From positions 917,169 to 981,168 of the forward strand of contig NW_003314331.1 in NCBI RefSeq assembly GCF_000143415.4: a stretch of 64,000 bases of DNA, read 5' to 3'. Shown here one piece after another: positions 12,514-64,000 of this stretch; within the stretch, counting starts at the first letter, position 1; each line of letters starts with the position of its first letter. The translations under genes were made by a program, and so were the position numbers. Below the pieces are notes generated by a model. The model ran no database searches. It saw only the letters and a list, made by a program, of their open reading frames with translations, and had not been told where the DNA came from. Source of the DNA: Selaginella moellendorffii. Its lineage: Eukaryota > Plantae > Lycopodiophyta.

Positions 12514-13269
12514 ATCTTTTATTTCGATCTTTTGCCGAGCAAAGAGGCAAGAACACCAGGAACTCTAGACAATGCACAGCGAATTTCTTTCTCTATACAG
12601 CATCGTCGGCGTTAAGTCTTTAGTAGATCATCAAAAGCTTTTCTCTTTTTTTGTGGATTTTCTCTCTTTTTTTTTCTTACGGTATGGTGGTGGAGATGAT
12701 CAGCTTGATCCTCCCCTTCTAGCTCTTTAGATGTGGAAAACAAGCGTGAAGATCGACCTTGGGATGCTTCGCTTCGGCGTGCTCTTTGCATTTCACCTCA
12801 CTCGTCGTGCACATAAACGTTTGCATACAAATCTTGCACTGCCAAGAGGAAAGATTGGCACGAAAATCCATCAAGCGCATCGAGCAGTCGAGAAGGAAGA
12901 GTTCTCATACCTGGATGTTCATAGCTTTCTTATTGGAATCGAGTTGGCTACCTGCCAGAAACGAGATGGAAATCAAGCAAAATTCTTTTCCGAGAAGAAA
13001 TTGCGCACCTTTGCCGCTCGCCTTGGCCTTCTCCAAGTTCCGATCGCGGGCCATCTTCGATTTCTGCGCATTGCCTCCGCCCATAGCTGCCGCCGCTCGA
13101 TCGACCGCTCGCTCCGTCCGCCAATCAAAACCCTAGAACAATGGAGCGTCCGCCTTGCCAGGATTTGAGCCTTGGACGTCCTGGACCGATCTCGTCCTTC
13201 ATCCAACGCCCATGATGCCTCGTTGGCGTGGACGGCCATGATCCAACGCCACTGCGCGGTTGGATATAA

Positions 13270-14121
13270 AGGCCAGGCATGGACGTCCATGAGCAAGATG
13301 AGATTGCAGTTTCGCAATGGTTTCAAGAAGCATGAGTCGCAGGTCTTCGAGATCATAACCTTTCCAAAGTTCGGCATTGGACAGCGTGCGTTTCTCATCC
13401 AGACTCAAGGTATGTATGTTTGGAGCTATGGCCGTTGTGCATTTTTTATGGTTTTTATGTTTTTGATAGAGGGAAACATACTATCTCATTTCTAGACGAT
13501 GCCACAGTGGAGATAATCAAGTCACTAGGTGGATTGAGAGCGATTGCCATCTCTCACCCGCATTACTACAGCACAAACTCTCAATGGAGCGAGGCTTTTG
13601 GAGGTGTCCCGGTTTATATCCACCAATGGTATTGTCTACCTTTGTTTCTCTCTTTTATTTCGATCTCTCTGTATCAATACTTTGGCAGGGATATGAAATG
13701 GGTTGTTTACGAGCACGAAAACGTGAAGTTCTGGGAGGGCAAAACATTCCAGCTAAGTCATGCTTTTACATTCAGGTGGGCATTTTGCTGGTGCTCAAAT
13801 CCTCCACTGGTCTCATGGAGCTCAACGGAGGGGTGTTTTATTCACTGGAGATATCTTACAGGTATAAACTTATCTCGTTTACAAACTTTGTTTTCGTTTT
13901 TTTTTCCTCGCTCCCCATGTTTGATTTGTAAGTGTACCCAACTATCTACCACTCTCGTCGAGCCATGCTAAAAGGATAAACCAGTTAACCAAGCCATGGG
14001 ATTTTGAGAGGCTTTATGGTGTGTTTCAGGACAGAGAGATTGAAGAGAACGCAAAGAGCTGCGTCGTATTCTCTCTTCAAAGGTATATTGATTGGCTATC
14101 TTTGGATGACGCTGCTGCTTA
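13270..14121 (+). pseudogene. 5'-truncated, frameshifted copy of the MBL-fold hydrolase at 22810-23886
   Basis: Near-identical to reverse complement of 22810-23720; lacks exon 1; deletions at WDCI and in the last exon. Confidence 0.85.
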
Positions 14122-14237
14122 ATGTCAATTGGCTCTCAAGTAATTAATCAGACTGAAACTCTACATGCTTTTCTGATTATGATTTGCCAAAACATTGTTC
14201 AGTGGATACATGAGTTTCTTTTTACAAGATCTTTTGT

Positions 14238-14882
14238 CTAACCTTTAAGCTTCTCCAATGCTTGTCTTACATCTTCAACTCTTGCAATTTCTTTAAGCAG
14301 ATTGCTTATCTTCTTCAATTCATCATATTTATGCCCTTTCCTGTTTTTAAATGCACGAATTACAAGTCCATTGCTAGGTTGCAAGCAAAAGGACTCTGGC
14401 TTGTCGTCCACGATCACCGTGTGTCTGAGGTCCCGCCCTAATCTCGAAAGATCTTTCACAACCTTTTTCCCTCTGACTTCCTTGGGCGAGCATGAATCTC
14501 TATAAAGGTGATGGGTGAAGAGATTCCCAGTTGGGTCGAGCCTATCCAATATCCTGTCCGCATAAGGCTTCACCGCTCGAGTAAAAACCACAATCTCATA
14601 TATCTTACTCATTTCATCTAGAAATGTATCCACGCCCGGCCGCTTTGCAACAAGGTAGCGCTGCAGTGGAAGAGTCTTCCCACTAAAGAGCTTGAGGGAC
14701 GCTGTGGCCTTGTGGGCATGGATTAGTGTCTCATCTATGTCTAACACAAGTGTGGGTTTCTCCTCCAAAGCTGGTGGTAGTAATGGAGAATTGTGTGTCA
14801 CTTTTACCTTCTTGTTCTTGTCTTTGGTGGCAATGTCGAGCGTTGCAAAACTCCAATCCCCATATTCTTTCGCCCTCTTCAT
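14238..14882 (-). CDS. SCP1/FCP1-like small CTD phosphatase (NIF/HAD), intronless
   Basis: KPTLVLDIDETLIH (DxDxT), KRPGVDTFL, YEIVVFT, YADRILDRLD, KDLSRLGRDL, IVDD. Confidence 0.88.
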   Translation of the reverse strand: MKRAKEYGDWSFATLDIATKDKNKKVKVTHNSPLLPPALEEKPTLVLDIDETLIHAHKATASLKLFSGKTLPLQRYLVAKRPGVDTFLDEMSKIYEIVVFTRAVKPYADRILDRLDPTGNLFTHHLYRDSCSPKEVRGKKVVKDLSRLGRDLRHTVIVDDKPESFCLQPSNGLVIRAFKNRKGHKYDELKKISNLLKEIARVEDVRQALEKLKG

Positions 14883-14989
14883 GGCTCTGAAAAAAGAAAA
14901 GGAAAGAATGCAAGCCCTAAGTTAAAGAATCTTTGTTAATACACTTTAGTATCATTCTCCTAGAAATTCGACCCGTGAGTCGACTTGAT

Positions 14990-16255
14990 CTCATGGACCA
15001 GTGCCAGCACGCCGCAAGCACGCTCATAAAGACGACATCGCGCTCTCCAGGATGATCCTATGGAAGGTTTCCAAGGCTTCGGTTACATGCCACCAAGTCT
15101 CGCTCTGGCATTTTCTCGAACCAAACTCGAAGGAGTCCCCTGTGAGCGAGGCCTGCCACCATTGCCATCCAGGCGATCACATCGCGCTCCTCCATCTCCT
15201 GGAAGAGGCTCATCGCTTCTTGGAGGTAGAGATGAGCGCTGTGCTTGCTCGTAAGGCATTCGATAGAAAATAAACTTTGAAGTTTAAAAATGGTTTCTAG
15301 AGGCGAGCATATGAATCATTGTCGCCCAAGAGATCTCGTTGTGGTGAGCCATCCTTTGGAATGAATCTAGTGCCTCGTCAAATGCCAATTTGCACAAAGC
15401 AGGGGGCCACCACGTCTTTGTCTGGCAGCCTCTCAAACAAAGCTTAAGCCTCTTCCACGCAGCCATGAGATGCGTAGGCGTCGATCATAGCCGTAAATGC
15501 CACCTCATTAAGATCCGGAGCATCTTCAAAGAGACGCTCCATATGCCGTCCCTGGGCATATGCTGTGATCATGGTCGCCCATGTTACTACATTCCCTGTG
15601 GGCATTCTATTGAAGAGATCTCTCACTTAATCCAGCCGCTGGTTCTGGCAGTAGCCTTGGATCATGGTCGTCTACGCCACCACGTCCTTTCGGGGCATGG
15701 AATCGAACACCTCGTGCAAGCGTGAAAGATGCCCGTTATAGGCATATGCCACGATCGTGGCCGTGCTACAAACGATGGTTTGCTCCGGCATGGAGTGGAA
15801 TACCGCCTCCGCCTCGCCGAGATTGCCACTCGGCGAGTACATCTCGATCATCGCGTTCCAGGTGATGGAATTCTTTGCAGGGATGCGATCGAAGAGCTGC
15901 TTGGCGCGCTGCACGTCCCCGGCCGCGGCGTATGCCGAGATAATGGCGTTGCTGGACACAATCTCCTACCGCGGCATGCTTTCCAGGACCGATCGCGCCT
16001 GCTCCAGGTCGTGGTTGCGAATGTAGGCCTGGAGGGTGAGATTCCAAGAGAAGAGATTCGGATCCGAGCTAGAATCAAAGACCGATCCCGCTTCCTCCAG
16101 ACATTTTGACGAGGAGATTTCGCAGGAAGACGCCGTTCTTGTGGTTGCTCTGGGCGTGGATCCGGCGGCCATCGCTGGGATTGTCGCAAGATGCGACGAG
16201 GGCGGCAAGCTCTTGGACGCCAGGAACGCGCATCGCATCATGGCCGTTGGATGAT
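14990..16255 (-). pseudogene. PLS-class PPR pseudogene
   Basis: PPR motifs (NLFSWN, LFDRIPAKNSITWNAMI, VFDSMPRKDVVA) interrupted by stops/frameshifts. Confidence 0.8.
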
Positions 16256-18206
16256 GGACGGGGTGGGACGTCCGAGGTTCAAGTCCTGGCTTCGATGCTC
16301 CAGCCAAGAATCGAATGAGGATGTTTTCGTGTCATATATGAACATCTTGCAAGACTCACATTGTCAAATTCACACTAAGCTGTGCCTCTTCATCTTTTGA
16401 TTGAGTATACATCTCGAGCAGAATCCCTCCCATTGCATTGCCATCAAATTCCAGTGTTTGAAGTTTTAGTCGCATTAATATCATACATTAACTTTGATAC
16501 CAACCGATAATTGTGATACTTGAGCAGCAAAAGAGAGCCAATCGCTATATCTTTGGCGACGCAGCTCTTTGCGTTATCCCTGTCTTGATTGAAACGCTAG
16601 AGCCTCCCAAAATCCCATGGCTCGATTAACTGTAGCAGGGCTTGCCGGGAAAGAGGTATCGACGTTGAAGGGAAGAACGTGGTGGCCTGGAACTCTATGC
16701 TGTGCGCATATGCACATATCCCGCGAATGGTGTCTTTGAAATGATGGCTCACCGCGACCAGATCTTTTGGACGATACCAGAAACCATTTTGAAAATCCAA
16801 AGTTTCTCTTGGGTAGGATTAAGAGGCTCCTCTGCCACCTCCAATCCTTGCGATCGGCTGGACGGCAGTGGTGGCAGGCTTAAGGTTGGTTCGAGAGAAT
16901 TCCAGTGCGAGACTTACAAAGAAAAAACACTTTTTTACTCAAACAGTAGATGCCAAACCTTACAATCTAGATTAAAATATGAACACTCCTTACTGCCATT
17001 TTACTATGGATTTTTCAGTTCACTATAGCTCACTACTTTTGTATGTTCCTTAGAAGTTGTAACAAATCAAGAGAATATGTGCATCCTGCTTGTATATCCC
17101 TTAATCCTGGCTCTTAGTTGCATGAGAACTCTTACCTTCTAGCTAGCTGCTAGCTTCTTTGAGGTCCTCTCTCGACATAGCCATGCAGCAAAGTAATCCA
17201 TGAGATTGAGTTCCTCAATGTCAAAGGTGTTATTTTCGGAGGTGATGTTGAGATTTGTCTTGGTAATCAAGTAGATTTGAGACATAAATTCCGTCAAAGC
17301 ATTAACCAAGAAACCACTGCTCTTCACTTTAATTCCCGTAGAAAACAATAAGATTATTAAAATCTTAAATTAGTGGAAACTAGACAAATTTGAAGTTGTT
17401 TAGCCACTTTATTATACACCTCCTCTTTTCGTGCATGTAACTCCCTTATCTTTGGAGTGCCTCCAATATGTACTCATCTCAGGCTGTTCAAGTGAAGAAT
17501 TGTGCTAATCAGTTTGTTTAGAAAATAGCAAGTGCTCCTCAATTGTGAGTTAACTATATTTTAATTATCTTACCTGTTGAATCACGAGAGCTTAGTGGTT
17601 TGTCTTCTTCCACTTCAAGTCTCTTCAGTTTTCTACAACTAGACCTCAACCTCAACTTTTACATAGGTAGTCTTCAATATCTTGATCATAGTTTCAAGAG
17701 CTGCTTCATTACTAACCTTAAATGATCAACATCCTCATTGTCTGCATAATTTTTGAGCCAATGCAGCCTTTGTCTTGACGTACAGTACGTCACTGGTCAA
17801 ACATCCAGCTGAGACATCTTGTTCTGATTGCAATGAGGATAATCATGTCATAATTTGTTGAAGTTTATAACAACAAATTAATAAGTTGTTAAGAGAAAAA
17901 AAAAACATTTTGATTAAGATTTTTAAACCATAGTTTTTAATAAAATAAATCACGACCATCAAAAATTAAAAAAACCTAAAATCTAAACCAAACAAAAAAA
18001 ATATACTTCTTATGAAAAAGAATAAGCACAATTCACTAATCAGAATTAGTGATCCTGAAAGTTACCTGATTGCATAGCATTTTTCAGTACATATAAGCTC
18101 CTAATCAAAGCCGTTTTGTGTGGGCGAAATCTTTGATCGAGCCTTGGCACCAAAAGACTTTTCTTCCCAGCTATCTTTTTTACATAAAACTCTACCTATT
18201 TAGTGG

Positions 18207-19573: not shown

Positions 19574-19984
19574 ATGGCTCAGGTCAAGATGTTAATGGTG
19601 GTGGTGGTGATGGTGGCGCTACTGTTGCTCGCAGAGGGAATTGAAGGAAGGAGAGATCCTCTTAGCAGGGGAAGTGGAGGATCCAAAGGAGGCGGTGGAG
19701 GATCGAAAGGAAGTGGTGGAGGATCCCAAGGAGGCGGTGGATCAAAAGGAAGTGGTGGAGGATCGAAAGGAGGCGGTGGATCAAAAGGAAGCGGTGGAGG
19801 ATCCAAAGGAAGTGGTGGAGGATCGAAAGGAGGCGGTGGATCAAAAGGAAGTGGTGGAGGGATCTTCCCAAACTGCCCAGTCTGTTCACAAATCATATTT
19901 GACGACAGTGGTTCTTCTCGGTGCTCCGCCACCTCCACCGCCACTGCCATCGCTGCCGCCGCCGCAGCTTTGGCTGTCCTGTAA
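19574..19984 (+). CDS. Glycine-rich secreted protein (GGGSKGSG repeats), possible GPI anchor
   Basis: Hydrophobic N-terminal signal, ~9 G/S/K repeats, CPVC, Ala-rich hydrophobic C-terminus; TATA-like tataaat at ~19538. Confidence 0.7.
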   Translation: MAQVKMLMVVVVMVALLLLAEGIEGRRDPLSRGSGGSKGGGGGSKGSGGGSQGGGGSKGSGGGSKGGGGSKGSGGGSKGSGGGSKGGGGSKGSGGGIFPNCPVCSQIIFDDSGSSRCSATSTATAIAAAAAALAVL

Positions 19985-20699
19985 GGTTTGACATCTACTG
20001 TTTGAGTAAAGAAGTGTTGTTTTTTATTTTGGTAAGTCTCGCACTCTCGAACCAACCTCGTCCAGGCGATCGCATCACGCCCTGGAAGAGGCTTGGAGGA
20101 GCCTCTTAATCCTATCCAAGAGAAACTTTGGATTTTCAAGATGGTTTCTAGTGTCGTCCAAAAGATCTCGTCGCGGTGAGACATCTTTTTGAAGAGATCA
20201 TTCGCGCCATATCCGCACAGCATAGAGTTCCAGGCCACCAGGCCACCACGTCTTTCTTTGGGAGCGTCTCAAAGCCTCTAAAACGTCGATACCTCTTTTT
20301 GGCAAGTCATGCTACAGTTAATCGAGCCATGGGATTTTGGGAGGCTCTAGCGTTTCAATCAAGACAGGGATAACGCAAAGAGCTGCGTCGTCAAAGATAT
20401 AGCGATTTGCTCCCTTTGGAAGACTCTGCTGCTCAAGTATCACAATTCTTGATTGGTATCAAAGTTAATGAATGATATTAATGCGACTAAAACGTCAAAC
20501 ACTGGAATATGGATGGCAATGCAATGCCTCGGGATTGTGCTCAAGACGTATAAAGATGGTATCTGGGAGTTGAAGAGGCACAACTTGGTGTGTTACGTGA
20601 ATTTGACAATGTGAGTCTTTTATATATGCACAAAAACACCCTCGTTCCCGGACCATGGTGCTTGACATGGAAGCCAGGACTTGAACCTCGGACGTCCAC

Positions 20700-21936
20700 C
20701 CCGTCCATCATCCAACGGCCATGATGCGATGCGCGTTCCTGGTATCCAAGAGCTTGCCGCCCTTCGGGGCCGGGGACGTGCAGCAGCTCTTCGACCTCAT
20801 CCCTGCCAAGAATTCCATCACCTGGAACGCGATGACCGCGATGTGCTCGCAGAGTGGCAATCTCCGCGAGGAGGAGGCGGTATAGCAAACCCTCGTTTTT
20901 AGCACCGCCATGATCGTGGCATATGCCCATAACCGGCATCACTCACATGCGCGTGAGGTGTTCGATTCCCTGGCCCAAAAGGACGTGGTGGCGTGGAGGG
21001 CTATGATCTAAGGCCACTTCCAGAACCAGCGGCTAGATGAAGCTAAAGATCTCTTGGATAGAATGCCCACAAAGAATGTAGTAACATGGACGACCAGGAT
21101 CACAGCATGTGCCCAGGAAGGGCATATGGAGCAAGAAAAGAGTCTCTTTGAAAATGCCCCGGAACTTAATGAGGTGGAAATTACGGCTATGATCGACGGC
21201 TACGCATCTAATGGCTGCGTAGAAGAGGCTAAATATGTTTTTGAGAGGCTGCCAAAAAAAGATGTGGTGGCTTAGAATTCCATGCTTTGTGCATATGCCG
21301 AGAATGGGCATTTTGAAGAGGCACTAAAAGATGGCTCACCGCGATTGGGCGACAATGATCCATCTGCTTGTCTCTAGAAACCATCTCAAAAATGCAAAAT
21401 TTATTTTCAATCGAGTGCCTTACGATAGCAAGACGGCAAGCACAGCACTCCTCTCAGCCTATCTCTGGAACAGCCACCTCCAAGAAGCAATGAGGCTCTT
21501 CCAGAGGGCGGGCGTCGCAAGGGACTCCTCTTGGAGGATTGAGTTTGGTTCGAGAGAATGCCAAAGCAAGACTTGGTCTCACAGACTGCAGTGGGGTGGC
21601 CATGTATGCTTCCACCGGGCATGTGACAGAAGCCTTGGAAACCTTCCATAGGATCATTCTGGAGAGCGTGATGTTGTCTTTACGAGCGTGCTTGCAGCAT
21701 GCTGCCACTCAGGCATCATGAAAATCTCTTGGGACTACTTTCAGTCAATGATCCAGGACTATGGAGTCAAGCCCATGGGAGAACACTATTGCAGGCTTGT
21801 GGAAGTGTTTGCAAGGGCCGAGGCCGAAAAGCAGCATGAGTGTTGCTTGGGTCTTGCTGCTTGCCAGAAGATCCATAAGGATCTTGAATATGGAGCTCCA
21901 GCTGCCGAGAGGCTCTTGGTGCGGGTTATTTACTAA
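20700..21936 (+). pseudogene. PLS/E-class PPR pseudogene (inverted paralog of 14990-16255)
   Basis: Broken PPR motifs ending LAACCHSG..DYGVKP..EHYC. Confidence 0.8.
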
Positions 21937-22003
21937 AGTGTATTAACCTGATTTATAAAAATCATTTACAATTAAGCTAGGGCTCGCATTCTTTCTATAT
22001 GCA

Positions 22004-22640
22004 ATGAAGAGGACGTGGGAGTATGAGGAATGGAGTATTGCAACACTCAGACATCACTACCAAAACAAAGAACAAAAAGGTAAAGGTGAAGAGGTGACAC
22101 ACAATTCTTTGCTACTACTACCAGCTTTGGAGGAGAAACCATGCTTGTGTTAGAAATGGACAAGAAATTAATCCATGCCCACAAGGCCACAGTGTCCCTC
22201 AAGCTCTTCAGTTGGAAAACTCTTTCACTGGAAGTGCTATCTTGTGGCAAAAAGGTTGGGCATGGATACATTTCTAGACGAGATGAGTAAGATATGTGAG
22301 ATTGTGGTCTTTACTCCGAGTGGTGAAACCATATGTAAACAAGAACTTGAATAAGCTCAACCCAGCTAGGAATCTCTTTGCCCATCACCTCTACAAGGAT
22401 TCATGCTCCACCAAGAAGTCGAAGGGAGAAAGGTTGTGAAAGATTTTTTGAGATTAGGGTGGGATGGTGATTGTGGACGACAAGCCAAAGTCCTTTTGCT
22501 TGCAGCCTAACAATGGAATTATTATCCGTGCATTCAAAAATAAGAAAGGGCATAAGTATGATGAATTGAAGACAATAAGCAAAGAAAATTTCAAATGTTG
22601 AAGATGTAAGACAAGCATTGGAGAAGCTAAAAAGTTAAAC
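22004..22640 (+). pseudogene. Frameshifted SCP1-like phosphatase copy
   Basis: Reverse-complement paralog of 14238-14882 with indels; DIDET changed to EMDKK. Confidence 0.85.
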
Positions 22641-22809
22641 AAAAGATCTCGTAAAAAAGAAACTCATGTATCCACTGTGTATGCTGTAACACTGTTCACT
22701 CTAATTGATTGTGGCATAGTTTCCCTCACGAAAACAAATGTCCAATTTAAACTTTGGAAACAATGTCATGGCAAATCATAATCAGAAAAGCATTCAGTCT
22801 GATTAATAC

Positions 22810-23886
22810 TTAAGCAGCAGCATCATCCAAAGAGAGCCAATCGATATACCTTTGCAGAGAGAATACGACGCAGCTCTTTGCGTTCTCTTCAATCTCTCTG
22901 TCCTGAAATGCACCGTAGAGCCTCTCAAAATCCCATGGCTCGATTACCTGGCCTATCCTTTTAGCGTGGCTCGACGAGAGTGGTATATAGTTTGGATACG
23001 ATCTCATTATGCTCACTGTTTTGTTGTCCATCCCCACCTACAAATCAAACATGGAGTGAGGAAAACAAAACGAAAACAAAGTTTGTAAACGAGAGAAGTT
23101 TATACCTGTAAGATATCTCCAGTGAATAAAACACCCCTCCCCTGAGCTCCATGAGACCAGTGGAGGATTTGAGCACCAGCAAAATGGCCACCTAAATGTA
23201 AAAGCGTGAGTCCCTCCCATAGCTGGAATGTTTTGCCCTCCCAGAACTTTACGTTTTCGTGCTGGTAAACCACCCATTTCTTATCCCTGCCATAGTATCG
23301 ATACAGAGAAATCGAAATGAAAGAGAGAAACAAAGGTAGACAATACCATTCGTGGATATAAACCGGGACGCCTCCAAAAGCCTCGCTCCATCGAGAGTTT
23401 GTGCTGTAGTAATGCGGGTGAGAGATGGCAATCGCTCTCAATCCACCTAGCGACTTGATTATCTCCACTGTGGCATCGTCTAGAAATGAGATGCAGTCCC
23501 ACAGTATGTTTCCCTCTATCAAAAACATAAAAACCATTAAAAAAAATGCACAACGGCCATAGCTCCAAACATACATACCTTGAGTCTGGATGAGAAACGC
23601 ACGCTGTCCAATGCCAAACTTTGGAAAGGTTATGATCTCGAAGACCTGCGGCTCATGCTTCTTGAAACCATTGCGAAACTGCAATCTCATCTTGCTCATG
23701 GACGTCCATACCTGGCCTTCCCTAAAACTAAATGTCAGGAAAACTCGAGGGCAAAAATCTTAGATGGGCATACCTTGGAACGAACTGGCGATCATCGGAG
23801 CAAATAATACACGACGAAGGCGGGCCTTGGGAGGATGTTGGAGGGAACTCCACCCCACAAGTCTTACAAATATGACCATCCGCCAT
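22810..23886 (-). CDS. Metallo-beta-lactamase-fold hydrolase (YmaE-like) with N-terminal CxxC..CxxC; 4 short introns
   Basis: ICKTCG..CIICSDDRQFV; FGIGQRAFLIQT; NILWDC; AIAISHPHYY; GGHFAG; LFTGDI; SYPNYIPL; FERLYGAF. Confidence 0.85.
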
Positions 23887-25212: not shown

Positions 25213-25237
25213 TGCGGTGAGCGTGGATCGAACACGC

Positions 25238-25280
<43 letters not shown>

Positions 25281-25285
25281 CCCGC
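25213..25285 (-). tRNA. trnF: tRNA-Phe(GAA)
   Basis: GCGGGGATAGCTCAGTTGGGAGAGCGTCAGACTGAAGATCTGAAGGTCGCGTGTTCGATCCACGCTCACCGCA; full cloverleaf. Confidence 0.97.
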
Positions 25286-29339: not shown

Positions 29340-30600
29340 AGCAGCGACTGCACCTTGAGCAAGCTTCCAGATCCAGCCAAGCTCGAAAACATTCGTCGCA
29401 GATGAATCACAGGTTGCCAAAACTAGTTTCTTACCATCCGCCCAGGAACGCGCAACATCGGCCAAACGACTAGTGATGATAACATGAGGCCGACATTGCT
29501 GTAGCACCTGGACGATTGCAGCTAGAACCCTGTTGTCAACTAGTGACATCGGGTAAAAATCAAGTCATACCAATCACTTACGTCAGAAGGAAGAACTCCT
29601 TTCTTCACTGCTGCAGGAAGAAGAGGTCATCGCAAATTCTTCTGAGCTGCTAGAAGATGAGCTGAGCCTGGGCGAGACATTTTAGAACTACGTAAGCTTG
29701 GCACTGGAGCAGCTCCAATGCCGCATTGGGACTCACATCCAATCCGCACGAAATCTCTCCGCCGCAAAAAAGATAAAATATCGAACCAAAACACGATTCG
29801 AGCTGCCTGCTACTCACCAGGAGCAGCGCGCGTGAAACACTTCTTCGAGTTGCCCGTTTCGGGCAAATGCTGTTATCGTTTCAGTCCGTACCTTTCGGGC
29901 GTCAATGAAAAACCTTTTCGCCTATTCCCTCTACTCAAGCGCAAAAGTAGTTACTGACTGGTCTTGATGAAAATCCAATTGTTGGTTGAGCTTTCTCAGC
30001 TCCAGTAGACCAAGCACAGAACAAATGCAAGGAGCAGCTTGAATCCGTGAGTCGCTGTCCCCTAATGGTCGCACCTTGCTGGATGGATCGTGGAAAAAAC
30101 TAGATCCAGAGCAATCGTTGCCACATATGTCACCAGGCTGCCCGGCCCAGGAACATAAAACCATGGTTTCTCATCGTTTTGAGTTGTGGACTGGCAGATG
30201 TGAGCTTGGTGGCTGCAAAGGACGACCTCGGCAATATTTTCTCTCATGTTTTATGTTTCTTCGTTTTCTTTTTTCTTCAGGCTCGAAAGATTCCTCCACA
30301 CCAGCTACCAACGAATCAAAGATAATGCGGTGAGCGTGGATCGAACACGCGGCCTTCAGATCCAGTCTGGCGCTCTCCCAAACTGAGCTTGGATGGTTTT
30401 AGACAATAACTTCAATATGATTAAGTTAAAATGTAAAAGCATACCTCTACAATGAGAGTTTGGGGGCTGCAGCGATCTCGATCAAACCACTACAGCGGCT
30501 ACTCTATAAATTACTCTTTAATCTCCTCATCCCAGTCGCGTACAATAAGCTTATTACTGTCTATCAAATACCGAAAATGAGTAAAATCACTTGGACCGGA
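29340..30600. repeat. Direct duplication of 62710-64000
   Basis: Identical ORF MPHWDSHPIRTKSLRRKK at 29718 and 63094; same truncated tRNA and PPR fragment. Confidence 0.92.
30326..30389 (-). pseudogene. Truncated tRNA-Phe pseudogene
   Basis: Matches 25213-25285 with an anticodon-loop deletion and missing 5' acceptor strand. Confidence 0.85.
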
Positions 30601-36415: not shown

Positions 36416-36863
36416 CTATTCTCTAGTCAGCTCAACATCAAACAACAGCAAACAACAAACTTGATACTCTCCAAGGGGAGGGGGCGCGCCATAGTGTGGG
36501 TTCCTGTTTGCCTTTGGGCCGTCATAGTCGCTGGTGTGGACCTCTCCAAGGAGCTTCCTGCCGTTGAGAGCCTGGAAGAAAAAAGAGTGATAGAGAGAGA
36601 GAGAGAGAAGAAGAAGAAGAACTTATAGTTAACAACAGAAAATGTGAAACGTAGGAGAAGATTATCAACCTGGCCCTGTTCAGCCAGCAAGCTCGCATCT
36701 GCAAACCAATTAAAAACAGTAGGAAACTAGATTGTGGAGGAAAATAACAAAGAAATGAAATCTATATGTGCCCTCTACCTTTGTCTCCACTAGTAGCAAA
36801 AGCGGCAGTGATGAGCAGGCATGAGAGCAGGGCTGCGAGCACAAGCTTGCGAGAAGGAGCCAT
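36416..36863 (-). CDS. Small secreted PSY-like sulfopeptide precursor, copy 1 (exons 36863-36779, 36698-36670, 36571-36416; 89 aa)
   Basis: Spliced: MAPSRKLVLAALLSCLLITAAFATSGDKDASLLAEQGQALNGRKLLGEVHTSDYDGPKANRNPHYGAPPPLGEYQVCCLLLFDVELTRE; GT/AG sites keep frame. Confidence 0.75.
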
Positions 36864-40706: not shown

Positions 40707-40779
40707 TGCGGTGAGCGTGGATGGAACACGCGGCCTTAAGATCTTCAGTCTGACGCTCTCCCAACTGGGCTATGCCCGC
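40707..40779 (-). pseudogene. Full-length tRNA-Phe(GAA) copy with 5 substitutions (TTCGA to TTCCA), probably non-functional
   Basis: Compared base-by-base with 25213-25285. Confidence 0.8.
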
Positions 40780-41071: not shown

Positions 41072-41501
41072 CTATCCCATCAGCGGCGGGGGCGCGTAGT
41101 GTAGGTTCATGTTCGCGCCTGGACCGCCATAGTCGCTGATCTCTCCAAGGGGCGGGGGCGCGCCGTAGTGTGGGTTCCTGTTTGCCCCTGGAGCGTCATA
41201 GTCGCTGGTATGGACCTCTCCAAGGAGCTTCCTGCCTTTGAGAGCCTGGAAGAAAGAGAGAGAACTTCTTATAACAGGAAAGGAAAAGGAAACGTAGAAG
41301 AAGATTTCTCAACCTGGCCCTGCAAGCTTGCATCTGCAAATCCAATTCAAAACAGTGAGAAACGAGATTGTGGAGGAAGGTAACAGAGAAATGAGATCTA
41401 TATGTGCTCCCTCTACCTTTGTTTCCGCTAGTAGCAAAAGCGGCAGTGATGAGCAGGCATGAGAGCAGGGCTGCGAGCACAAGCTTGCGAGAAGGAGCCA
41501 T
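41072..41501 (-). CDS. Small secreted PSY-like sulfopeptide precursor, copy 2, two tandem peptide domains (exons 41501-41417, 41333-41314, 41245-41072; 92 aa)
   Basis: Spliced: MAPSRKLVLAALLSCLLITAAFATSGNKDASLQGQALKGRKLLGEVHTSDYDAPGANRNPHYGAPPPLGEISDYGGPGANMNLHYAPPPLMG*. Confidence 0.82.
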
Positions 41502-41779: not shown

Positions 41780-43531
41780 ATGTTGGAAGCATCGAGCAAC
41801 ATCGTGGGATCGCAGCAATCCTTCTTTGCGACGCTCCTGAGCCAGTCTGGAGGCTCTGGCGATCTCGATCAAACCCGGAAGATCCACTCCCGGATAGTGG
41901 ACAGCGGCTACTCCAAAGACAAGTTTCTCCTCAATCTCATCATTAATGCTTACGGAAAATGCGGCAGTGTCGGAGATGCGCGCCGTGTCTTCTCCGCGAT
42001 CGATCACCCCAATCTCTTCTCATGGAACATTATGATCCAAGCATATGCCCGAAACGGGCATCTAGATGAAGCGCGTAACCTCTTTGATCGATCTCATTCC
42101 CCCGATCCAGTCGCATGGAATGAAATGATCACTGCCTATGCGCATCTTGGGGAGATGGAGGAAGCCAAACTATTGTTTGATCGAGTGCCAGAAAAGAGTG
42201 AAATCACCTGGACCGGAATGATAACAGCATATGCCAGAAACGGGCATCTGAACGAAGCTAGGACGGTGTTTGACGCAATGCCGATTGAGAAGAAAACCAT
42301 AGCTTCGTGGACGGCAATGCTCCAGGGCTACACCCAAAACTCCCGGATCGATCAGGCCCTCGATTTCTTTCAGACGTTCCCGGCCCACAACGTGGTGTCC
42401 ATCACCGCCATGGTGTCGGCGCTCGCGAGCCACGGCCGTGGCGACGAGGCCGAGATGCTGTTCTTATCCATGCCCGCGAGGAATTTGCTCTCCTGGACTG
42501 TGATGATCCAGGCCTACTCCAAGCAGCAGCGCATCGATCGCGTCCGCGAGCTCTTCGAGTCGATGCCCGAGAGGGATCTCATCAGCTCCACGGCGGCGCT
42601 CCAGGCATTCTCCCGCGGTGGCGATCTCGACTCGGCCAAGTGCGTGTTTGATTCCATGCCCGAGCACAACACCATGTCGTGGGGATCAATGGTGGTGGCG
42701 CTTGCGGAGCGGCGGCGGCTCGAGGAGGCGGCGCTGCTCCTGGAAGCTATGCCTGGCGAGAAGAGCGTGGTGGGGGCAACAGCGCTATTCCAGGCGTATG
42801 CCCGGGATGGGTATCTAGACGAGGCTGAGATGATCTTCCGCGAGATGGGTGATCGCGATACCATTGCCCATAATGCGATGCTCCAGGTCTACGCGCAGCA
42901 TGGCCAGATGGGCGACGCCATTGCGGAGTTTCAATCCATGGCGTGGCGAAGCTCCTCATCATGGAACGCGATGCTCTCGGCGTATGCCCAGCACGGGCAT
43001 GTGGATCACGCGGCGGGTTTCTTCGCGGCTATGCCAATCAGGAGCTCTCCCGTTGCGTGGAACGCCATGATCGCAGCGTATAGACGCAACGGCAAGGACG
43101 AGCGGGCGATTTCCTCCTTCTGGGCGATGATCCTCGAGGGGATCCCGTGCGATGCGTCGACCATCGCGAGCGTTCTTGGAAGCTGCAGTCACGCGGGGAG
43201 ATTTGCCGAGGCGTGGACCTTGTTCCTGGCAATGAAGAAGGACTTTGGCGTGGATCCATCACACGAGCACTACTCGTGTGTGGCGGACGTTCTCGGCAGA
43301 TCTGGACTGGTGAGAGACGCCGAGGAGCTCATCAAGACAATGCCATTCGTTCCAGATGAGCGTGGCTGCGGTGGACTGCTCAATGCTTGTAGAGTTCATA
43401 GGGATTTGGAGAGAGGAGCAAAGGTGGCGATGAATGAGTTTAAAAGTGAGAGGAGCGAGCCTGTAAGCTACATGCTTCTTGCAAACTTGGTTACCGCTAA
43501 GATACCAAGTTTGGCTTCTGATTCAAAATAG
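41780..43531 (+). CDS. PLS-class PPR protein with E-type C-terminus (no DYW), 583 aa, intronless
   Basis: Tandem ~31 aa motifs (LFDRxP..WNxMI..YA..G); LGSCSHAG..EHYSCVADVLGRSG..MPF. Confidence 0.92.
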   Translation: MLEASSNIVGSQQSFFATLLSQSGGSGDLDQTRKIHSRIVDSGYSKDKFLLNLIINAYGKCGSVGDARRVFSAIDHPNLFSWNIMIQAYARNGHLDEARNLFDRSHSPDPVAWNEMITAYAHLGEMEEAKLLFDRVPEKSEITWTGMITAYARNGHLNEARTVFDAMPIEKKTIASWTAMLQGYTQNSRIDQALDFFQTFPAHNVVSITAMVSALASHGRGDEAEMLFLSMPARNLLSWTVMIQAYSKQQRIDRVRELFESMPERDLISSTAALQAFSRGGDLDSAKCVFDSMPEHNTMSWGSMVVALAERRRLEEAALLLEAMPGEKSVVGATALFQAYARDGYLDEAEMIFREMGDRDTIAHNAMLQVYAQHGQMGDAIAEFQSMAWRSSSSWNAMLSAYAQHGHVDHAAGFFAAMPIRSSPVAWNAMIAAYRRNGKDERAISSFWAMILEGIPCDASTIASVLGSCSHAGRFAEAWTLFLAMKKDFGVDPSHEHYSCVADVLGRSGLVRDAEELIKTMPFVPDERGCGGLLNACRVHRDLERGAKVAMNEFKSERSEPVSYMLLANLVTAKIPSLASDSK

Positions 43532-58125: not shown

Positions 58126-58186
58126 TCTGCTCAGTGGACTCGTGCACCTTAAAACTCCCAAGCTTTCAAATCTTAGCTACGGCATA

Positions 58187-58710
58187 TGTTAGGATCCTAT
58201 CCCTTACACCCTAAGCCAACTGGCTAAAGGGGTGATCACTTGATTGCAGGGCCCTTTCCTTATCCTATTATCCTAACCTGGTGCCTAATAATCCTCCCCC
58301 TCGTCAGGGAATGATCGTCCGTGATCATACTTAGGCCATCCTCCGGTCACCATGGTCCTTCTTTTAGGGTCTACCAAACCTTGGTTCTCCCTCTAGATCC
58401 ACCATGTTAAATATTCCTTTAGAATATTCTTGCCCCACTCGTCAGCCACGAGAATCGAACTGGGCAAGAATATTCTAAAGGAATATTTAACATGGTGGAT
58501 CTAGAGGGAGAACCAAGGTTTGGTAGACCTTAAAAGAAGGACCATGGTGACCGGAGGATGGCATAAGTATGATCACAGATGATCATTCCTTGACGAGGGG
58601 GAGGATTGTTAGGCACCAGGTCAGGATAATAGGATAAGGAAAGGGCCCTGCAATCAAGTGATCACCCCTTTAGCCAGTTGGCTTAGGGTGTAAAGGATAG
58701 GATCCTAACA
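58187..58710. repeat. ~250 bp inverted repeat (58187-58435 / 58462-58710), ~26 bp loop
   Basis: tgttaggatcctatcc...ttcttgccc vs gggcaagaa...ggataggatcctaaca. Confidence 0.93.
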
Positions 58711-58927
58711 TTGGTATCGGAGCTATGGTTGGATGGCCTATGGTGGGCATGGACTGGCAGGTAGGGATGTGTGGTGTGTTCAGCTTAGGGGGGAGTGTTG
58801 GAACTAAGCTGAACATGCACACAACCAGGGCAGGTAGCTCAGTGGTAGAGCACCTGGCACTGGTGTAGGAGGTTTTGGGTTCAATCCCCGGCCTGTCCAG
58901 ATCCATTTTCCAACATGGTATCGGAGT
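58595..58927 (+). mobile_element. Stack of TRIM-like units: PPT, LTR-A (58607-58710), PBS, ~65 bp, PPT, LTR-B (58796-58915), PBS
   Basis: TGTTAGG..CCTAACA and TGTTGGAA..TTCCAACA termini; PBS tggtatcggagc/t (iMet type); purine tracts gagggggagga and aggggggag. Confidence 0.8.
58828..58899 (+). ncRNA. tRNA-like cloverleaf within LTR-B (intact A/B boxes, degenerate anticodon arm)
   Basis: GGGCAGG TA GCTC AGTGGTA GAGC A CCTGG CACTGGT GTAGG AGGTT TTGGG TTCAATC CCCGG CCTGTCC A. Confidence 0.75.
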
Positions 58928-61782
58928 AACAATTTACCGGCGTCCATTTCGATTAAGTTATGCGGAGGAGCAAGAAGTTCAACGACAAGTCAAGGAGTTA
59001 CTTGAGTTTGGATTCATTCAGCCAAGTAAGTCTCCATTTGGTGCTCTGGTCTTGCTTGTGAAGAAGAAGGACGGTTCAATGCGAATGTGTATTGACTACC
59101 GCGCTTTGAACAAGAAGACAGTGAAGGATAAGATGCCGATGCCACGTGTAGATGATATCCTAGACAAGCTTGGTGAAGCACGAGTGTTTACCAAGATTGA
59201 TCTGAGGAGTGGATATCATCAGATTGCAATGGATGATGCATCTATCTCTAAGACGGCATTCAACACAAGCTTTGGACATTTTGAGTTTACAGTTATGCCG
59301 TTTGGTTTGACGAATGTACCGGCCACATTTACTCGATTGATGACGGAGGTCTTTGGGCATTATCTTCATGAGTTTGTGGAGATTTTCTTGGACGATATTC
59401 TTGTTTTTAGCAAAAATATGGAGGAGCATAGGGTGCATTTGCGCAAGGTTCTTTTGTTACTCCGAGACAGCAAACTTTATGCGAAGAAGAGCAAATGTGA
59501 ATTTGCAAAGTCAAAGGTGGAATATCTAGGCCATATTGTGACATATAAGGGTGTCAAGACGGATCCAAGGAAGGTGGCTATGGTGGAAAACTGGCCTACA
59601 CCGACTACAGTGGCTGAGTTGCGCAGTTTTCTTGGTATGGCTAGTTACTACCGATGTTTCCAGCATAAGTTTGCAGAGGTGGCTATTCCTTTGACGCGGT
59701 TGTTACGTAAGAATGTGCCATTCGAGTGGAAGACGCCACAAGAGGAGAGTTTTGTGGCGCTGAAACGATTGTTGAGCGAGGCTCCAGTGCTTCGCATTGC
59801 TGATCCATCGAAACCTTACGAGGTGACATGCGATGCGAGTGGTTATGCACTGGGAGGAGTTCTCATGCAAGAGGGACAGCCTATTGCATATGAGAGTCGA
59901 ACTTTGAATTCTGCTGATATTCCACATATGAGCAAGAGTTACTCTCTATTGTTCATGCTTTGCGGACATGGCGACACTATCTTTATGGTGCAGTGTTCGT
60001 GGTGTTGACAGATCACAAACCACTTGTGTATCTTTTCACACAGAAGGAGTTGAACACTAGGCAAGCTCGTTGGATGGTCAAACTCATGGAGTTTGGGGAG
60101 TTTCCTATTGAGCATCGTCCGGGAAAATCAAATGTGGTGGCGGATGCTTTATCTCGTGTTCGTCATGTGACGACGTTACAAACACGATTTTGTCATCATT
60201 TGAGTAAGGTGGTCAGCGAGTTTGGGTAATTGGTTGAGCATGCTCAGGCTCAGGATGCTGAGGTGGCCTCTTTGCGAGACCAAATGGAAGCTCCTTTCTC
60301 ATTGGTGGATGGGATTCTCTACTACAATGGCCGTGTCTATTTGCCACGGGTGGATGCGTTAATTACTCAAGTTTTATTCCACTATCATGATCGTCCAGAG
60401 GCCGGTCATTTTGGGGGGAAGAAGACGTATGAGTTGATTAAGCGCAACTTTTATTGGAGGAATATGAAGGCTGATATCCTCAAGTATTGTAAATCATGCG
60501 AGCTTTGGACTTTTGCAACCTTTACCTATTCCTCAGAGCCGTTGGTGTAGTATTTCTATGGACTTCATCACTTGTTTGCCACGAACACAGAGGCAAAAGG
60601 AGCAAGTATGGGTCATAGTGGATCGGTTGACGAAGTATGTGCGGTTGTTGGCTCTTCGGAAGACTGTCACTGCCTCAGACTTGGCTGCGGTTTACTTGGA
60701 GAAGGTTTTTCCTGATTTTGGTTTGCCAGAGGACATCATTAGTGATCGAGATTCAAAGTTCACTAGTGGATTTTGGAAAAGCTTTGCAAAAGCTATGCAA
60801 GTGACTTTGAAACTCTCGAGTGGAGATCATCCTCAGACGGATGGGCAAACTGAGCGTGTGAATCAGGTGGTGGAGGATATGCTACGTTGTAGCATTGGTC
60901 AAAGGTAAGGACAGTGGGATTTATATCTTCCGTTGGTGCAATTTGCTTACAATAATAGCCAACACAGTGGAACAAAGCTAAGTCCTTACTTTGCCATGTT
61001 TGGAAGGCATCCTCGAACAGCGGTGGAGTTGGGATTGCATTTGAGTAAGGACGTTCAAGATAAGCTTGATTCCGAGGCAACTGATCTGGCCACAGAACTT
61101 GATGAGATTTTGGTGGTGTGCAAACGGAATTTGCAAGCAGCTCAGGATAGAGCGGAGAAGTTTGCCAATGAGCATCGCCAATTCCGGGAATATAAGGTGG
61201 GTGATCTCGTCTTTGTGCGAGTGATCTTTCCGTCAAGTGAGCGGCGGAACACCTTGGTGCCTTTACGGACAGGGAAGAGTGATAAACTCTCCCATTGATA
61301 TGCTGGTCCATATGAAGTGCTGGAGCGCATTGGTAAAGCGGCTTATCGGGTGCGGCTGCCAGCTGGGGTGAAAATTCATCCGGTATTTTATGTCAGCCAG
61401 TTGAAAGGTGTACTATCTCGGAGTGACGGGCCCAATGCCTCCTTGATGTATACGGCTGTGGAAGATGGACCAGGAGCTTGAGCCCCCAGAAAGGGTGATC
61501 ACCAGTACAACTCATCCTTGGGACAAGGACTTTGTTGGGGGGGAAGAATTGTTAGGTGCCAGCTTTGACTACGTGGTCAACGTCGGTCAAAGGGAGGCTC
61601 AAGGGTATATTAAGGCATGTTAGGGTAAGGGACTTAACCTACCCTAGGGCTCACAGTGGAGCGGCAGCGCAGTGGAGCTTTTGAGGTAGCTCGGGGGTGG
61701 TTGGGTGGTGAGGAACCTCAAGAGGTGGCGTAGCATAGTCTAGGGCAACTAGAGCTTTGTCTTTTTGTGCCGGATCATAACA
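58928..61782 (+). mobile_element. Defective Ty3/gypsy retrotransposon: RT-RNaseH-integrase with stops/frameshifts, PPT ~61537-61549, 3' LTR ~61550-61782
   Basis: RMCIDYRALN, DLRSGYHQI, MPFGLTN, FLDDIL, CDASG, TDHKPL, ISMDFI, IISDRD, QTDGQTERVN, GPYEV. Confidence 0.93.
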
Positions 61783-62709: not shown

Positions 62710-64000
62710 AGCAGCGACTGCACCTTGAGCAAGCTTCCAGATCCAGCTAAGCTCGAAAACATTCGTCACAGATGGGTTGCCAAAACTAGTTTCTTACCAT
62801 CCGCCCAGGAAAGCACAACATCGGCCAAACGACTAGTGATGATAACATGAGGCCAACATTGCTGTAGCACCTGGACGATTGCAGCTAGAACCCTGTTGTC
62901 AACTAGTGACATCGGGTAAAAGTCAAGTCATATCAATCACTTACGTCAGAAGGAAGAACTCCTTTCTTCACTCCTGCAGGAAGAAGAGGTCATCCATTCC
63001 GAGACTAGCAAATTCTTCTGAGCTGCTGGAAGATGAGCTGAGCCTGGGCGAGACATTTTAGAACCAAGTAAGCTTGGCACTGGAGCAGCTCCAATGCCGC
63101 ATTGGGACTCACATCCGATCCGCACGAAATCTCTCCGCCGCAAAAAAGATAAAATATCGAACCAAAACACGATTCGAGCTGCTTGCTACTCACCAGGAGC
63201 AGCGCGCGTGAAACACTTCTTCGAGTTGCCCGTTTCGGGCAAATGTTGTTATCGTTTCAGTCCGTACCTTTCGGGCGTCAATGAAAAACCTTTTCGCCTA
63301 TTCCCTCTACTCAAGCGCAAAAGTAGTTACTGACTGGTCTTGATGAAAATCCAATTGTTGCTTGAGCTTTCTCAGCTCCAGTAGACCAAGCACGGAACAA
63401 ATGCAAGGAGCAGCTTGAATCCGTGAGTCGCTGTCCCCTAATGGTTGCACCTTGCTGGATGGATCGTGGAAAACTAGATCCAGAGCAATCTTTGCCACAT
63501 ATGTCACCAGGCTGCCTGCGGGCCGTTATGGCCCAGGAACATAAAACCATGGTTTCTCATCGTTTTGAGTTGTGGACTTGCAGATGTGAGCTTGGTGGCT
63601 GCAAAGGACGACCTCGGCTAGACAAAATATTTTCTCTCATTTTTTATGTTTCTTCGTTTTCTTTTTTCTTCAGGCTCGAAAGATCAGGAAGCTCCTCCAC
63701 ACCAGCTACCAACGAATCAAAGATAATGCGGTGAGCGTGGATCGAACACGCGGCCTTCAGATCCAGTCTGACGCTCTCCCAAACTGAGCTTGGATGGTTT
63801 TAGACAATAATTTCAATATGATTTAGTTAAAATGTAAAAGCTTACCTCTACAATGAGAGTTTGGGGGCTCCGGCGATTTCGATCAAACCACTACAGCGGC
63901 TACTCTATAAATTCCTCTTCAATATCCTCATCCCAGTCGCGTAGAATAAGTTTATTACTGTCTATCAAATGCCGGAAATGAGTAAAATCACTTGGACCGG
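62710..64000. repeat. Direct duplication of 29340-30600, continuing past the window end
   Basis: Near-identical sequence. Confidence 0.92.
63727..63790 (-). pseudogene. Truncated tRNA-Phe pseudogene
   Basis: Same lesions as 30326-30389. Confidence 0.85.

What the first reader, a model, noticed from the sequence alone, without database searches (positions are those of the whole stretch)
41072..41501. Hidden three-exon gene encoding a two-domain DY-sulfopeptide precursor (PSY-like)
Seen: splicing at canonical GT/AG sites, including a 20 nt micro-exon, gives a 92 aa protein that the ORF track misses. It has a signal peptide, a GRKLL basic motif and two tandem motifs, DYDAPGANRNPHYGAPPP and DYGGPGANMNLHYAPPP. 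Established: Arabidopsis PSY1 is DY(SO3)GDPSANPKHDPGVPPS preceded by RSLL, and Asp-Tyr is the TPST sulfation motif. Inference: one precursor releases two sulfated, possibly Hyp-arabinosylated peptide hormones. The PSY precursors I know carry a single domain.
Basis: partly seen in the sequence, partly recalled or inferred. Interest (0 to 1): 0.88.

Follow-up and report, generated by a model that had tools for sequence, protein, structure and literature searches.

The report
Spikemoss two-copy PSY-like peptide gene
A small gene that the public annotation missed in the spikemoss Selaginella moellendorffii most likely makes a secreted precursor with two copies of a divergent, PSY-like sulfated growth-signal peptide; it is a lycophyte variant of a known hormone type, and multi-copy PSY precursors were already known from rice.

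Summary
The window is Selaginella moellendorffii scaffold GL377635.1. The gene has no called model there, but JGI modelled its tandem paralogue (36863-36416) with the same two introns. One RNA read of a near-identical copy with a 29-nt micro-exon fits both junctions (inferred from depth bins); other RNA-type contigs are unspliced and expression is very low. A profile of angiosperm PSY precursors scores it 28.6 bits (shuffles at most 14.7), matching signal peptide, RxLL, DYxxPxAN and a phase-1 intron. The defining NxxHxP is not met (His shifted by one, Pro replaced by Tyr), so it is PSY-like, not a canonical PSY; RGF features fail too. The second domain comes from an internal ~66-69-nt duplication older than the gene duplications; at least six copies exist, three intact. 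The claimed novelty fails: rice OsPSY1/OsPSY7 carries four PSY repeats. Sulfation, processing and receptor are untested. The scan also noted a similar two-core gene and other divergent PSY-like genes elsewhere in this genome. Modest interest: candidate ligand for the lycophyte PSY receptor.

The parts
41417..41501 (-). Exon 1 (85 nt): ATG, predicted signal peptide (residues 1-23, 41501-41433), ends in a phase-1 intron
   Evidence: same exon in JGI model of paralogue; phase-1 intron at the same place in five angiosperm PSY genes
41334..41416 (-). Intron 1, 83 nt, GTAGAG...TTGCAG
41314..41333 (-). Micro-exon 2, 20 nt here and 29 nt in the other five copies (in-frame 9-nt difference)
   Evidence: one X17 read leaves exactly 29 nt between its exon-1 and exon-3 pieces
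41246..41313 (-). Intron 2, 68 nt, GTTGAG...TTCCAG, phase 0
41072..41245 (-). Exon 3 (174 nt): pro-region, both peptide domains and stop codon
   Evidence: both domains covered by X1 contigs and X17 reads
41222..41233 (-). RKLL, putative SBT6.1/S1P-type processing site, 10 residues before the first Asp
   Evidence: RxxL/RxLx recognition described in PMC7913133; R lies 8-9 (PSY1 itself 9) residues before DY in the PSY set
41150..41203 (-). Peptide domain 1, DYDAPGANRNPHYGAPPP (8/18 identical to PSY1 without gaps; not NxxHxP)
41084..41134 (-). Peptide domain 2, DYGGPGANMNLHYAPPP, internal duplicate of domain 1 (about 78% nucleotide identity)
36416..36863 (-). Tandem paralogue B (SELMODRAFT_424964): same three exons, one DY domain; a 129-nt deletion removed domain 2 and the original stop
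41780..43531 (+). Divergently transcribed PPR gene 278 bp upstream (context only)

Best explanation
A real, weakly expressed Selaginella moellendorffii gene for a secreted prepropeptide descended from, and working like, the PSY sulfopeptide precursors, with a lineage-specific change in the second half of the peptide and an internal duplication of the peptide unit. Proposed route: the three exons are spliced (shown only by one inferred read and by conservation); the signal peptide is removed in the ER (inferred); an SBT6.1-type subtilase cuts at RKLL and an Asp-specific subtilase frees each DY start (inferred from Arabidopsis, PMC7913133); TPST, which Selaginella has, sulfates the Tyr of each DY (inferred); prolines of the PPP tail may be hydroxylated as in PSY1 (inferred from register only). 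One 18-mer and one 17-mer are secreted and bind an LRR-RLK XI receptor, most likely the single Selaginella PSYR-clade kinase, to promote growth over stress responses (inferred). The second domain mainly raises the dose, as with the four-repeat rice precursor.
For: Gene model and conservation; spliced read and transcribed two-domain exon; PSY profile built without Selaginella sequences scores 28.6 bits, 0 of 5000 shuffles of the mature part reach it, max 14.7; ESM Atlas neighbour 'PSY3-like' at 0.92 for the single-domain paralogue; phase-1 intron after the signal peptide in all five PSY genes checked; D1 Y2 P5 A7 N8 G14 P16 P17 identical to PSY1; TPST and one PSYR-clade gene in S. moellendorffii, with no Selaginella PSY named in the text (PMC8462819; receptor clade names in PMC13618415); domain 2 kept in frame with DY and PGAN in five of six copies.
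Against: NxxHxP, present in 40 of 40 PSY-family hits and in moss PpPSY1, is absent. No homologue outside this species was found. Only 4 reads in about 2,760 million letters, and X1/X6 contigs keep the introns. No RxLL before domain 2, whose position 11 is L, R or P in the three intact copies. dN/dS signal in exon 3 is weak (p=0.06). The PSY comparison set is mostly Brassicaceae PSY1/2-type and was gathered with a PSY1 seed. Phase-1 introns after signal peptides are common in secreted proteins generally (own knowledge).
Confidence: 0.58

Rival explanations
1. Same gene and pathway, but only domain 1 yields an active peptide; domain 2 is a duplicate that is drifting or is trimmed away.
For: No RxLL before domain 2; three different residues at one codon of domain 2 among three intact copies; paralogue B in the window has lost domain 2.
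Against: The repeats are about 78% identical while exon 3 of copies A and B is 94% identical, so domain 2 is older than the gene duplication and still keeps DY, PGAN, N, HY and PPP with several synonymous changes.
Confidence: 0.18
2. A separate lycophyte sulfopeptide family (DYxxPGANxNxHY) that has left the PSY-PSYR pair and is read by another LRR-RLK XI receptor, for example an RGI, possibly with the second Tyr as a new determinant.
For: Fails the PSY motif; His at position 12 and DY..PG resemble RGF1; a Marchantia peptide of uncertain family shares DYxGP..NxNP; precedent of moss PSYL peptides with displaced His/Pro (10.1101/2024.05.13.593875).
Against: Precursor length, RxLL spacing, A7-N8 and the tail after position 13 match PSY, not RGF; RGF domains in the table read end in N or H and nearly all have Pro in positions 8-11, mostly 9-10 (by inspection); S. 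moellendorffii already has five typical RGFs.
Confidence: 0.16
3. The cluster is decaying or barely used: the copies are mostly unspliced or silent and make no peptide of consequence.
For: Very few reads; intron-containing contigs in X1 and X6; all three B copies are damaged; the unspliced A copies carry an unrelated 101-104 aa ORF without DY.
Against: Three A copies are intact, splice sites are invariant in all six copies where present, the micro-exon indel keeps frame, exons are more conserved than introns, and one read fits both junctions. Peptide-hormone genes are often expressed in few cells (own knowledge).
Confidence: 0.08

Closest known systems
[quoted passage not shown]
   Same: Short secreted precursor, phase-1 intron after the signal peptide, RxLL site shortly before DY, DYxxPxAN core, Pro-rich tail in register with PSY1 (G14, P16, P17).
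   Different: NxxHxP replaced by NxNxHY: His one place later, no Pro at 13, a second Tyr; an extra micro-exon and phase-0 intron compared with the five PSY1/2-type genes checked.
Rice OsPSY1 (Os05g40850; OsPSY7 in Tost et al. 2021), four PSY repeats in one precursor
   Same: Several DY peptide units in tandem in one precursor, from internal duplication.
   Different: Two units instead of four; non-canonical motif; presumably independent origin in a lycophyte (inference).
Moss PSY-like (PSYL1/2) peptides, Lyapina et al.
   Same: DY peptide of a non-seed plant with His and Pro displaced from the PSY positions.
   Different: PSYL motifs are shorter (DYDNHxP / DYDxNHP); no sequence match to them was tested or found.
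RGF/GLV/CLEL family
   Same: DY start; His at position 12; P5-G6 as in RGF1.
   Different: Position 13 is Tyr, no Pro at 9-10, PSY-type A7-N8 and tail; RGF precursors were reported as single-domain (PMC8708909).

Membership tests
PSY | N-terminal secretion signal | tested here: met
   Basic n-region, hydropathy peak 2.55, AFA/T site; by inspection, SignalP not available
PSY | Precursor of 60-200 aa with the domain in the C-terminal half | tested here: met
   92 aa, domains start at residues 50 and 73; criterion from PMC11641228
PSY | DY followed by xxxx[AP]N | tested here: met
   Both domains
PSY | NxxHxP completing the 13-residue motif DYxxxx[AP]NxxHxP | tested here: not met
   Both domains read NxNxHY; 40/40 PSY hits are canonical; motif from PMC7913133
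PSY | Basic RxxL/RxLx site shortly before DY | tested here: met
   RKLL 10 residues before domain 1; absent before domain 2
PSY | Similarity to a PSY precursor profile | tested here: met
   28.6 bits versus shuffled maximum 14.7; match ends at N8
PSY | Tyr sulfation by TPST and release as a mature peptide | not testable with these tools
   TPST present in the species per PMC8462819; no peptidomics available
PSY | Perception by PSYR and growth promotion of tpst plants | not testable with these tools
   One PSYR-clade gene in S. moellendorffii (Table 3)
RGF/GLV/CLEL | 13-mer ending in [HN][NH] | tested here: not met
   Ends HY; compared by inspection with the published domain table
RGF/GLV/CLEL | Pro at position 9 and/or 10 | tested here: not met
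   R/M at 9 and N at 10
RGF/GLV/CLEL | Score against an RGF profile | not tested
   No full-length RGF set was fetched
CIF/TWS1 and PSK | DYxxxxPxPPLxxPxPF (CIF) or YIYTQ (PSK) | tested here: not met
   Neither pattern is in the protein (patterns from PMC8462819); Pfam has no hit

The most novel reading that the evidence does not exclude
The DYxxPGANxNxHY peptides are the founding members of a lycophyte sulfopeptide family with changed receptor specificity (a co-evolved PSYR or a different LRR-RLK XI), with two differently acting, possibly doubly sulfated peptides released from one precursor.
Probability: 0.15. Interest if true: 0.62.

Novelty: new variant of a known kind. Interest (0 to 1): 0.36.

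Why it matters
The papers read here report PSY peptides in moss, liverwort, conifer and angiosperms and a PSY receptor orthologue in Selaginella, but name no Selaginella PSY ligand. This gene supplies a testable candidate, and its shifted His and missing Pro are a natural experiment on how strict the NxxHxP motif is for PSYR binding. It also shows that motif-based family surveys and the JGI annotation miss such genes. The two-domain layout itself is not new.

Tried and rejected
Pfam: no hit. Homologue searches with the 92-aa protein, exon 3 and a seeded alignment found only the S. moellendorffii copies and, when PSY1 was in the seed, Brassicaceae PSY1; three bacterial-type repeat proteins are chance hits. 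Metagenome contigs: nothing. Full-text search for the peptide strings and SELMODRAFT_424023: nothing; supplements of several PSY papers were not held or empty, and figure alignments cannot be read, so an earlier mention of these peptides is not excluded. Atlas search with exon 3 alone gave only weak scores (0.80 for PSY3-like). Rejected: a single-intron model 41417/41235 (its acceptor AG is absent in the B copies and the X17 read covers 41236-41245); the unspliced 101-aa ORF as the real product (stops at 33 aa in copy B); filing as RGF, CIF or PSK; multi-domain layout as novel. Structure prediction was not run because a 17-18 residue peptide gives no useful fold.

Full report
Observation. The N-terminus has a basic n-region, a hydrophobic stretch (Kyte-Doolittle peak 2.55) and an AFA/T site after residue 23; SignalP was not available. 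RKLL lies at 41233-41222, domain 1 at 41203-41150 and domain 2 at 41134-41084.

Source. The only homologues found are Selaginella moellendorffii proteins. Locus L003 matches the window exactly, which places the window at GL377635.1:917169-981168 of the JGI assembly. No gene is called at the focal position in that record or at the matching positions in L001 and L002, and the 92-aa sequence is not in the protein collection. The gene lies head to head with a PPR gene.

Copies. A tandem paralogue B lies at 36863-36416. The whole unit (TPT, PPR, copy A, copy B, GDSL lipase) is repeated about 31-33 kb further along the scaffold (L001) and occurs on scaffold GL377629.1 (L002). That gives six copies. 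The three A copies are intact (92, 95, 95 aa). All three B copies are damaged: the one in the window lost domain 2 and its stop by a 129-nt deletion, and the two others lost exon 1. JGI annotated only the B copies, as hypothetical proteins with a foreign C-terminus (SELMODRAFT_424964) or N-terminus (424969, 424023). So the single-domain copy is derived and the two-domain form is ancestral in this cluster. The two domains are about 78% identical in DNA while exon 3 of A and B is 94% identical, so the internal duplication came first.

Is the gene model real? Many GT-AG joins could put the DY motif in frame, so the model needs outside support. JGI's model of paralogue B uses the same two introns and a 29-nt micro-exon. 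The micro-exon is 29 nt in five copies and 20 nt here, a difference that keeps frame, and all four splice sites are unchanged wherever present. Exons of A and B differ at 11 of 210 sites and introns at 28 of 147 (p=5e-5); in exon 3, 5 changes fall on 41 synonymous and 5 on 130 non-synonymous sites (p=0.06). Exon 1 is no more conserved than the 130 nt upstream, so part of the similarity may be gene conversion.

RNA evidence is thin. Two 2026 RNA runs gave 3 and 1 reads in about 1,380 million letters each. The tool listed no joint. In X17, however, three reads give four pieces, so one read lies in two parts, 41186-41249 and 41417-41477. The second part ends exactly at the exon-1 donor; four bases of the first part are shared between intron end and micro-exon end; 60 + 61 nt leave 29 nt of a 150-nt read, the size of the long micro-exon. 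The variants in these reads match the A copy of L002, which has the 29-nt exon. This supports both junctions, but it is one read, inferred from bin depths, and not of the window's own 20-nt allele. Contigs of X1 and X6 (RNA only by guess) keep the introns; X1 does cover both domains and about 230 nt beyond the stop.

What it resembles. A profile built from 35 angiosperm PSY precursors, without any Selaginella sequence, scores the protein at 28.6 bits; none of 5000 shuffles of the mature part reached that (max 14.7). The match runs from the signal peptide through RxLL to DYxxPxAN and stops there. The ESM Atlas puts the single-domain paralogue next to a 'PSY3-like' plant cluster (0.92). Five PSY genes checked all have one phase-1 intron just after the signal peptide, like intron 1 here; this is common in secreted proteins, so it is modest support. 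Without gaps, domain 1 shares 8 of 18 residues with PSY1, including G14, P16 and P17 of the hydroxyproline tail.

Membership. The published PSY motif is DYxxxx[AP]NxxHxP (PMC7913133; PMC11641228). It holds in all 40 hits of my PSY set and in moss PpPSY1 (PMC13618415), so it is old. Both domains here read NxNxHY instead: His one place later, no Pro at 13, and a second Tyr. I therefore do not file the gene as a PSY, only as PSY-like. It also fails RGF features (terminal HN, Pro at 9-10), and Selaginella has its own typical RGFs. Displaced His/Pro is known in moss PSYL peptides, which are active when sulfated, and a nematode mimic tolerates a two-residue insertion (PMC10629525), so a shifted motif does not exclude PSY-type activity.

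Mechanism. Shown: the reading frame, the cluster, weak transcription and probable splicing. Inferred from Arabidopsis (PMC7913133): signal peptide removal, SBT6.1-type cut at RKLL, Asp-directed cut at each DY, TPST sulfation and possible Pro hydroxylation. Selaginella has TPST and one gene in the At1g17230/At2g33170/At5g63930 clade (PMC8462819), which are the PSY receptors. The likeliest function is growth-promoting signalling through that receptor, with the second domain adding dose (0.58). Rivals: only domain 1 matters (0.18; no RxLL before domain 2, position 11 is L, R or P); a separate family with another receptor (0.16); a decaying cluster (0.08).

Novelty. What remains new, as far as this library shows, is a lycophyte PSY-like sequence variant: no paper held contains these peptides, and the survey of non-flowering plants names PSY candidates in moss, liverwort and spruce but not Selaginella; figure alignments and most subscription papers could not be checked. 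No orthologue outside the species was reachable. Earlier scan notes list a similar two-core gene and other divergent PSY-like genes in this genome; I did not test those. Verdict: real gene with fair confidence, new variant of a known kind, interest 0.36.

Noticed in passing
window 41601-41519, minus strand: Possible 83-nt intron in the 5' UTR (GTGAGT ... CTATAG, 43% T), which would make the gene four-exon; the X1 contig across it is unspliced.
   Followed up: partly
window 41501-41196, minus strand: Unspliced A copies keep an open frame of 101-104 aa through both introns that lacks the DY domains; copy B stops after 33 aa.
   Followed up: partly
window 41103: One nucleotide in domain 2 gives Leu, Arg or Pro in the three intact A copies; it is the only exon-3 difference between the window copy and the L001 copy.
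   Followed up: partly
window 29340-30599 and 62710-64000; L001, L002: Segmental duplication of about 31-33 kb on scaffold GL377635.1 carrying TPT, PPR, the two peptide genes and a GDSL lipase.
   Followed up: partly
window 40707-40779 and 25213-25285; partial copies near 30323, 36169, 63724: tRNA-Phe(GAA) genes and tRNA-derived fragments; one lies about 290 bp downstream of the peptide gene.
   Followed up: no
window 58186-60008; L001 19663-20624: Ty3/gypsy-type reverse transcriptase ORF (58875-60008) with a tRNA-Gln-like element at 58828-58899 and a 528-nt palindrome at 58186-58711; JGI calls a subtilase-like model over the same stretch on the other strand.
   Followed up: no
window 13269-16964 versus 19980-23719: Inverted duplication of about 3.7 kb at 72-87% identity, including a NIF-type phosphatase ORF at 14238-14882.
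   Followed up: no
PMC8708909 supplement: Marchantia Mapoly0112s0043, filed there as an RGF that clusters with no group, shares DYxGP..NxNP with the B copies; two tomato entries in the same table look like PSY-type peptides.
   Followed up: no
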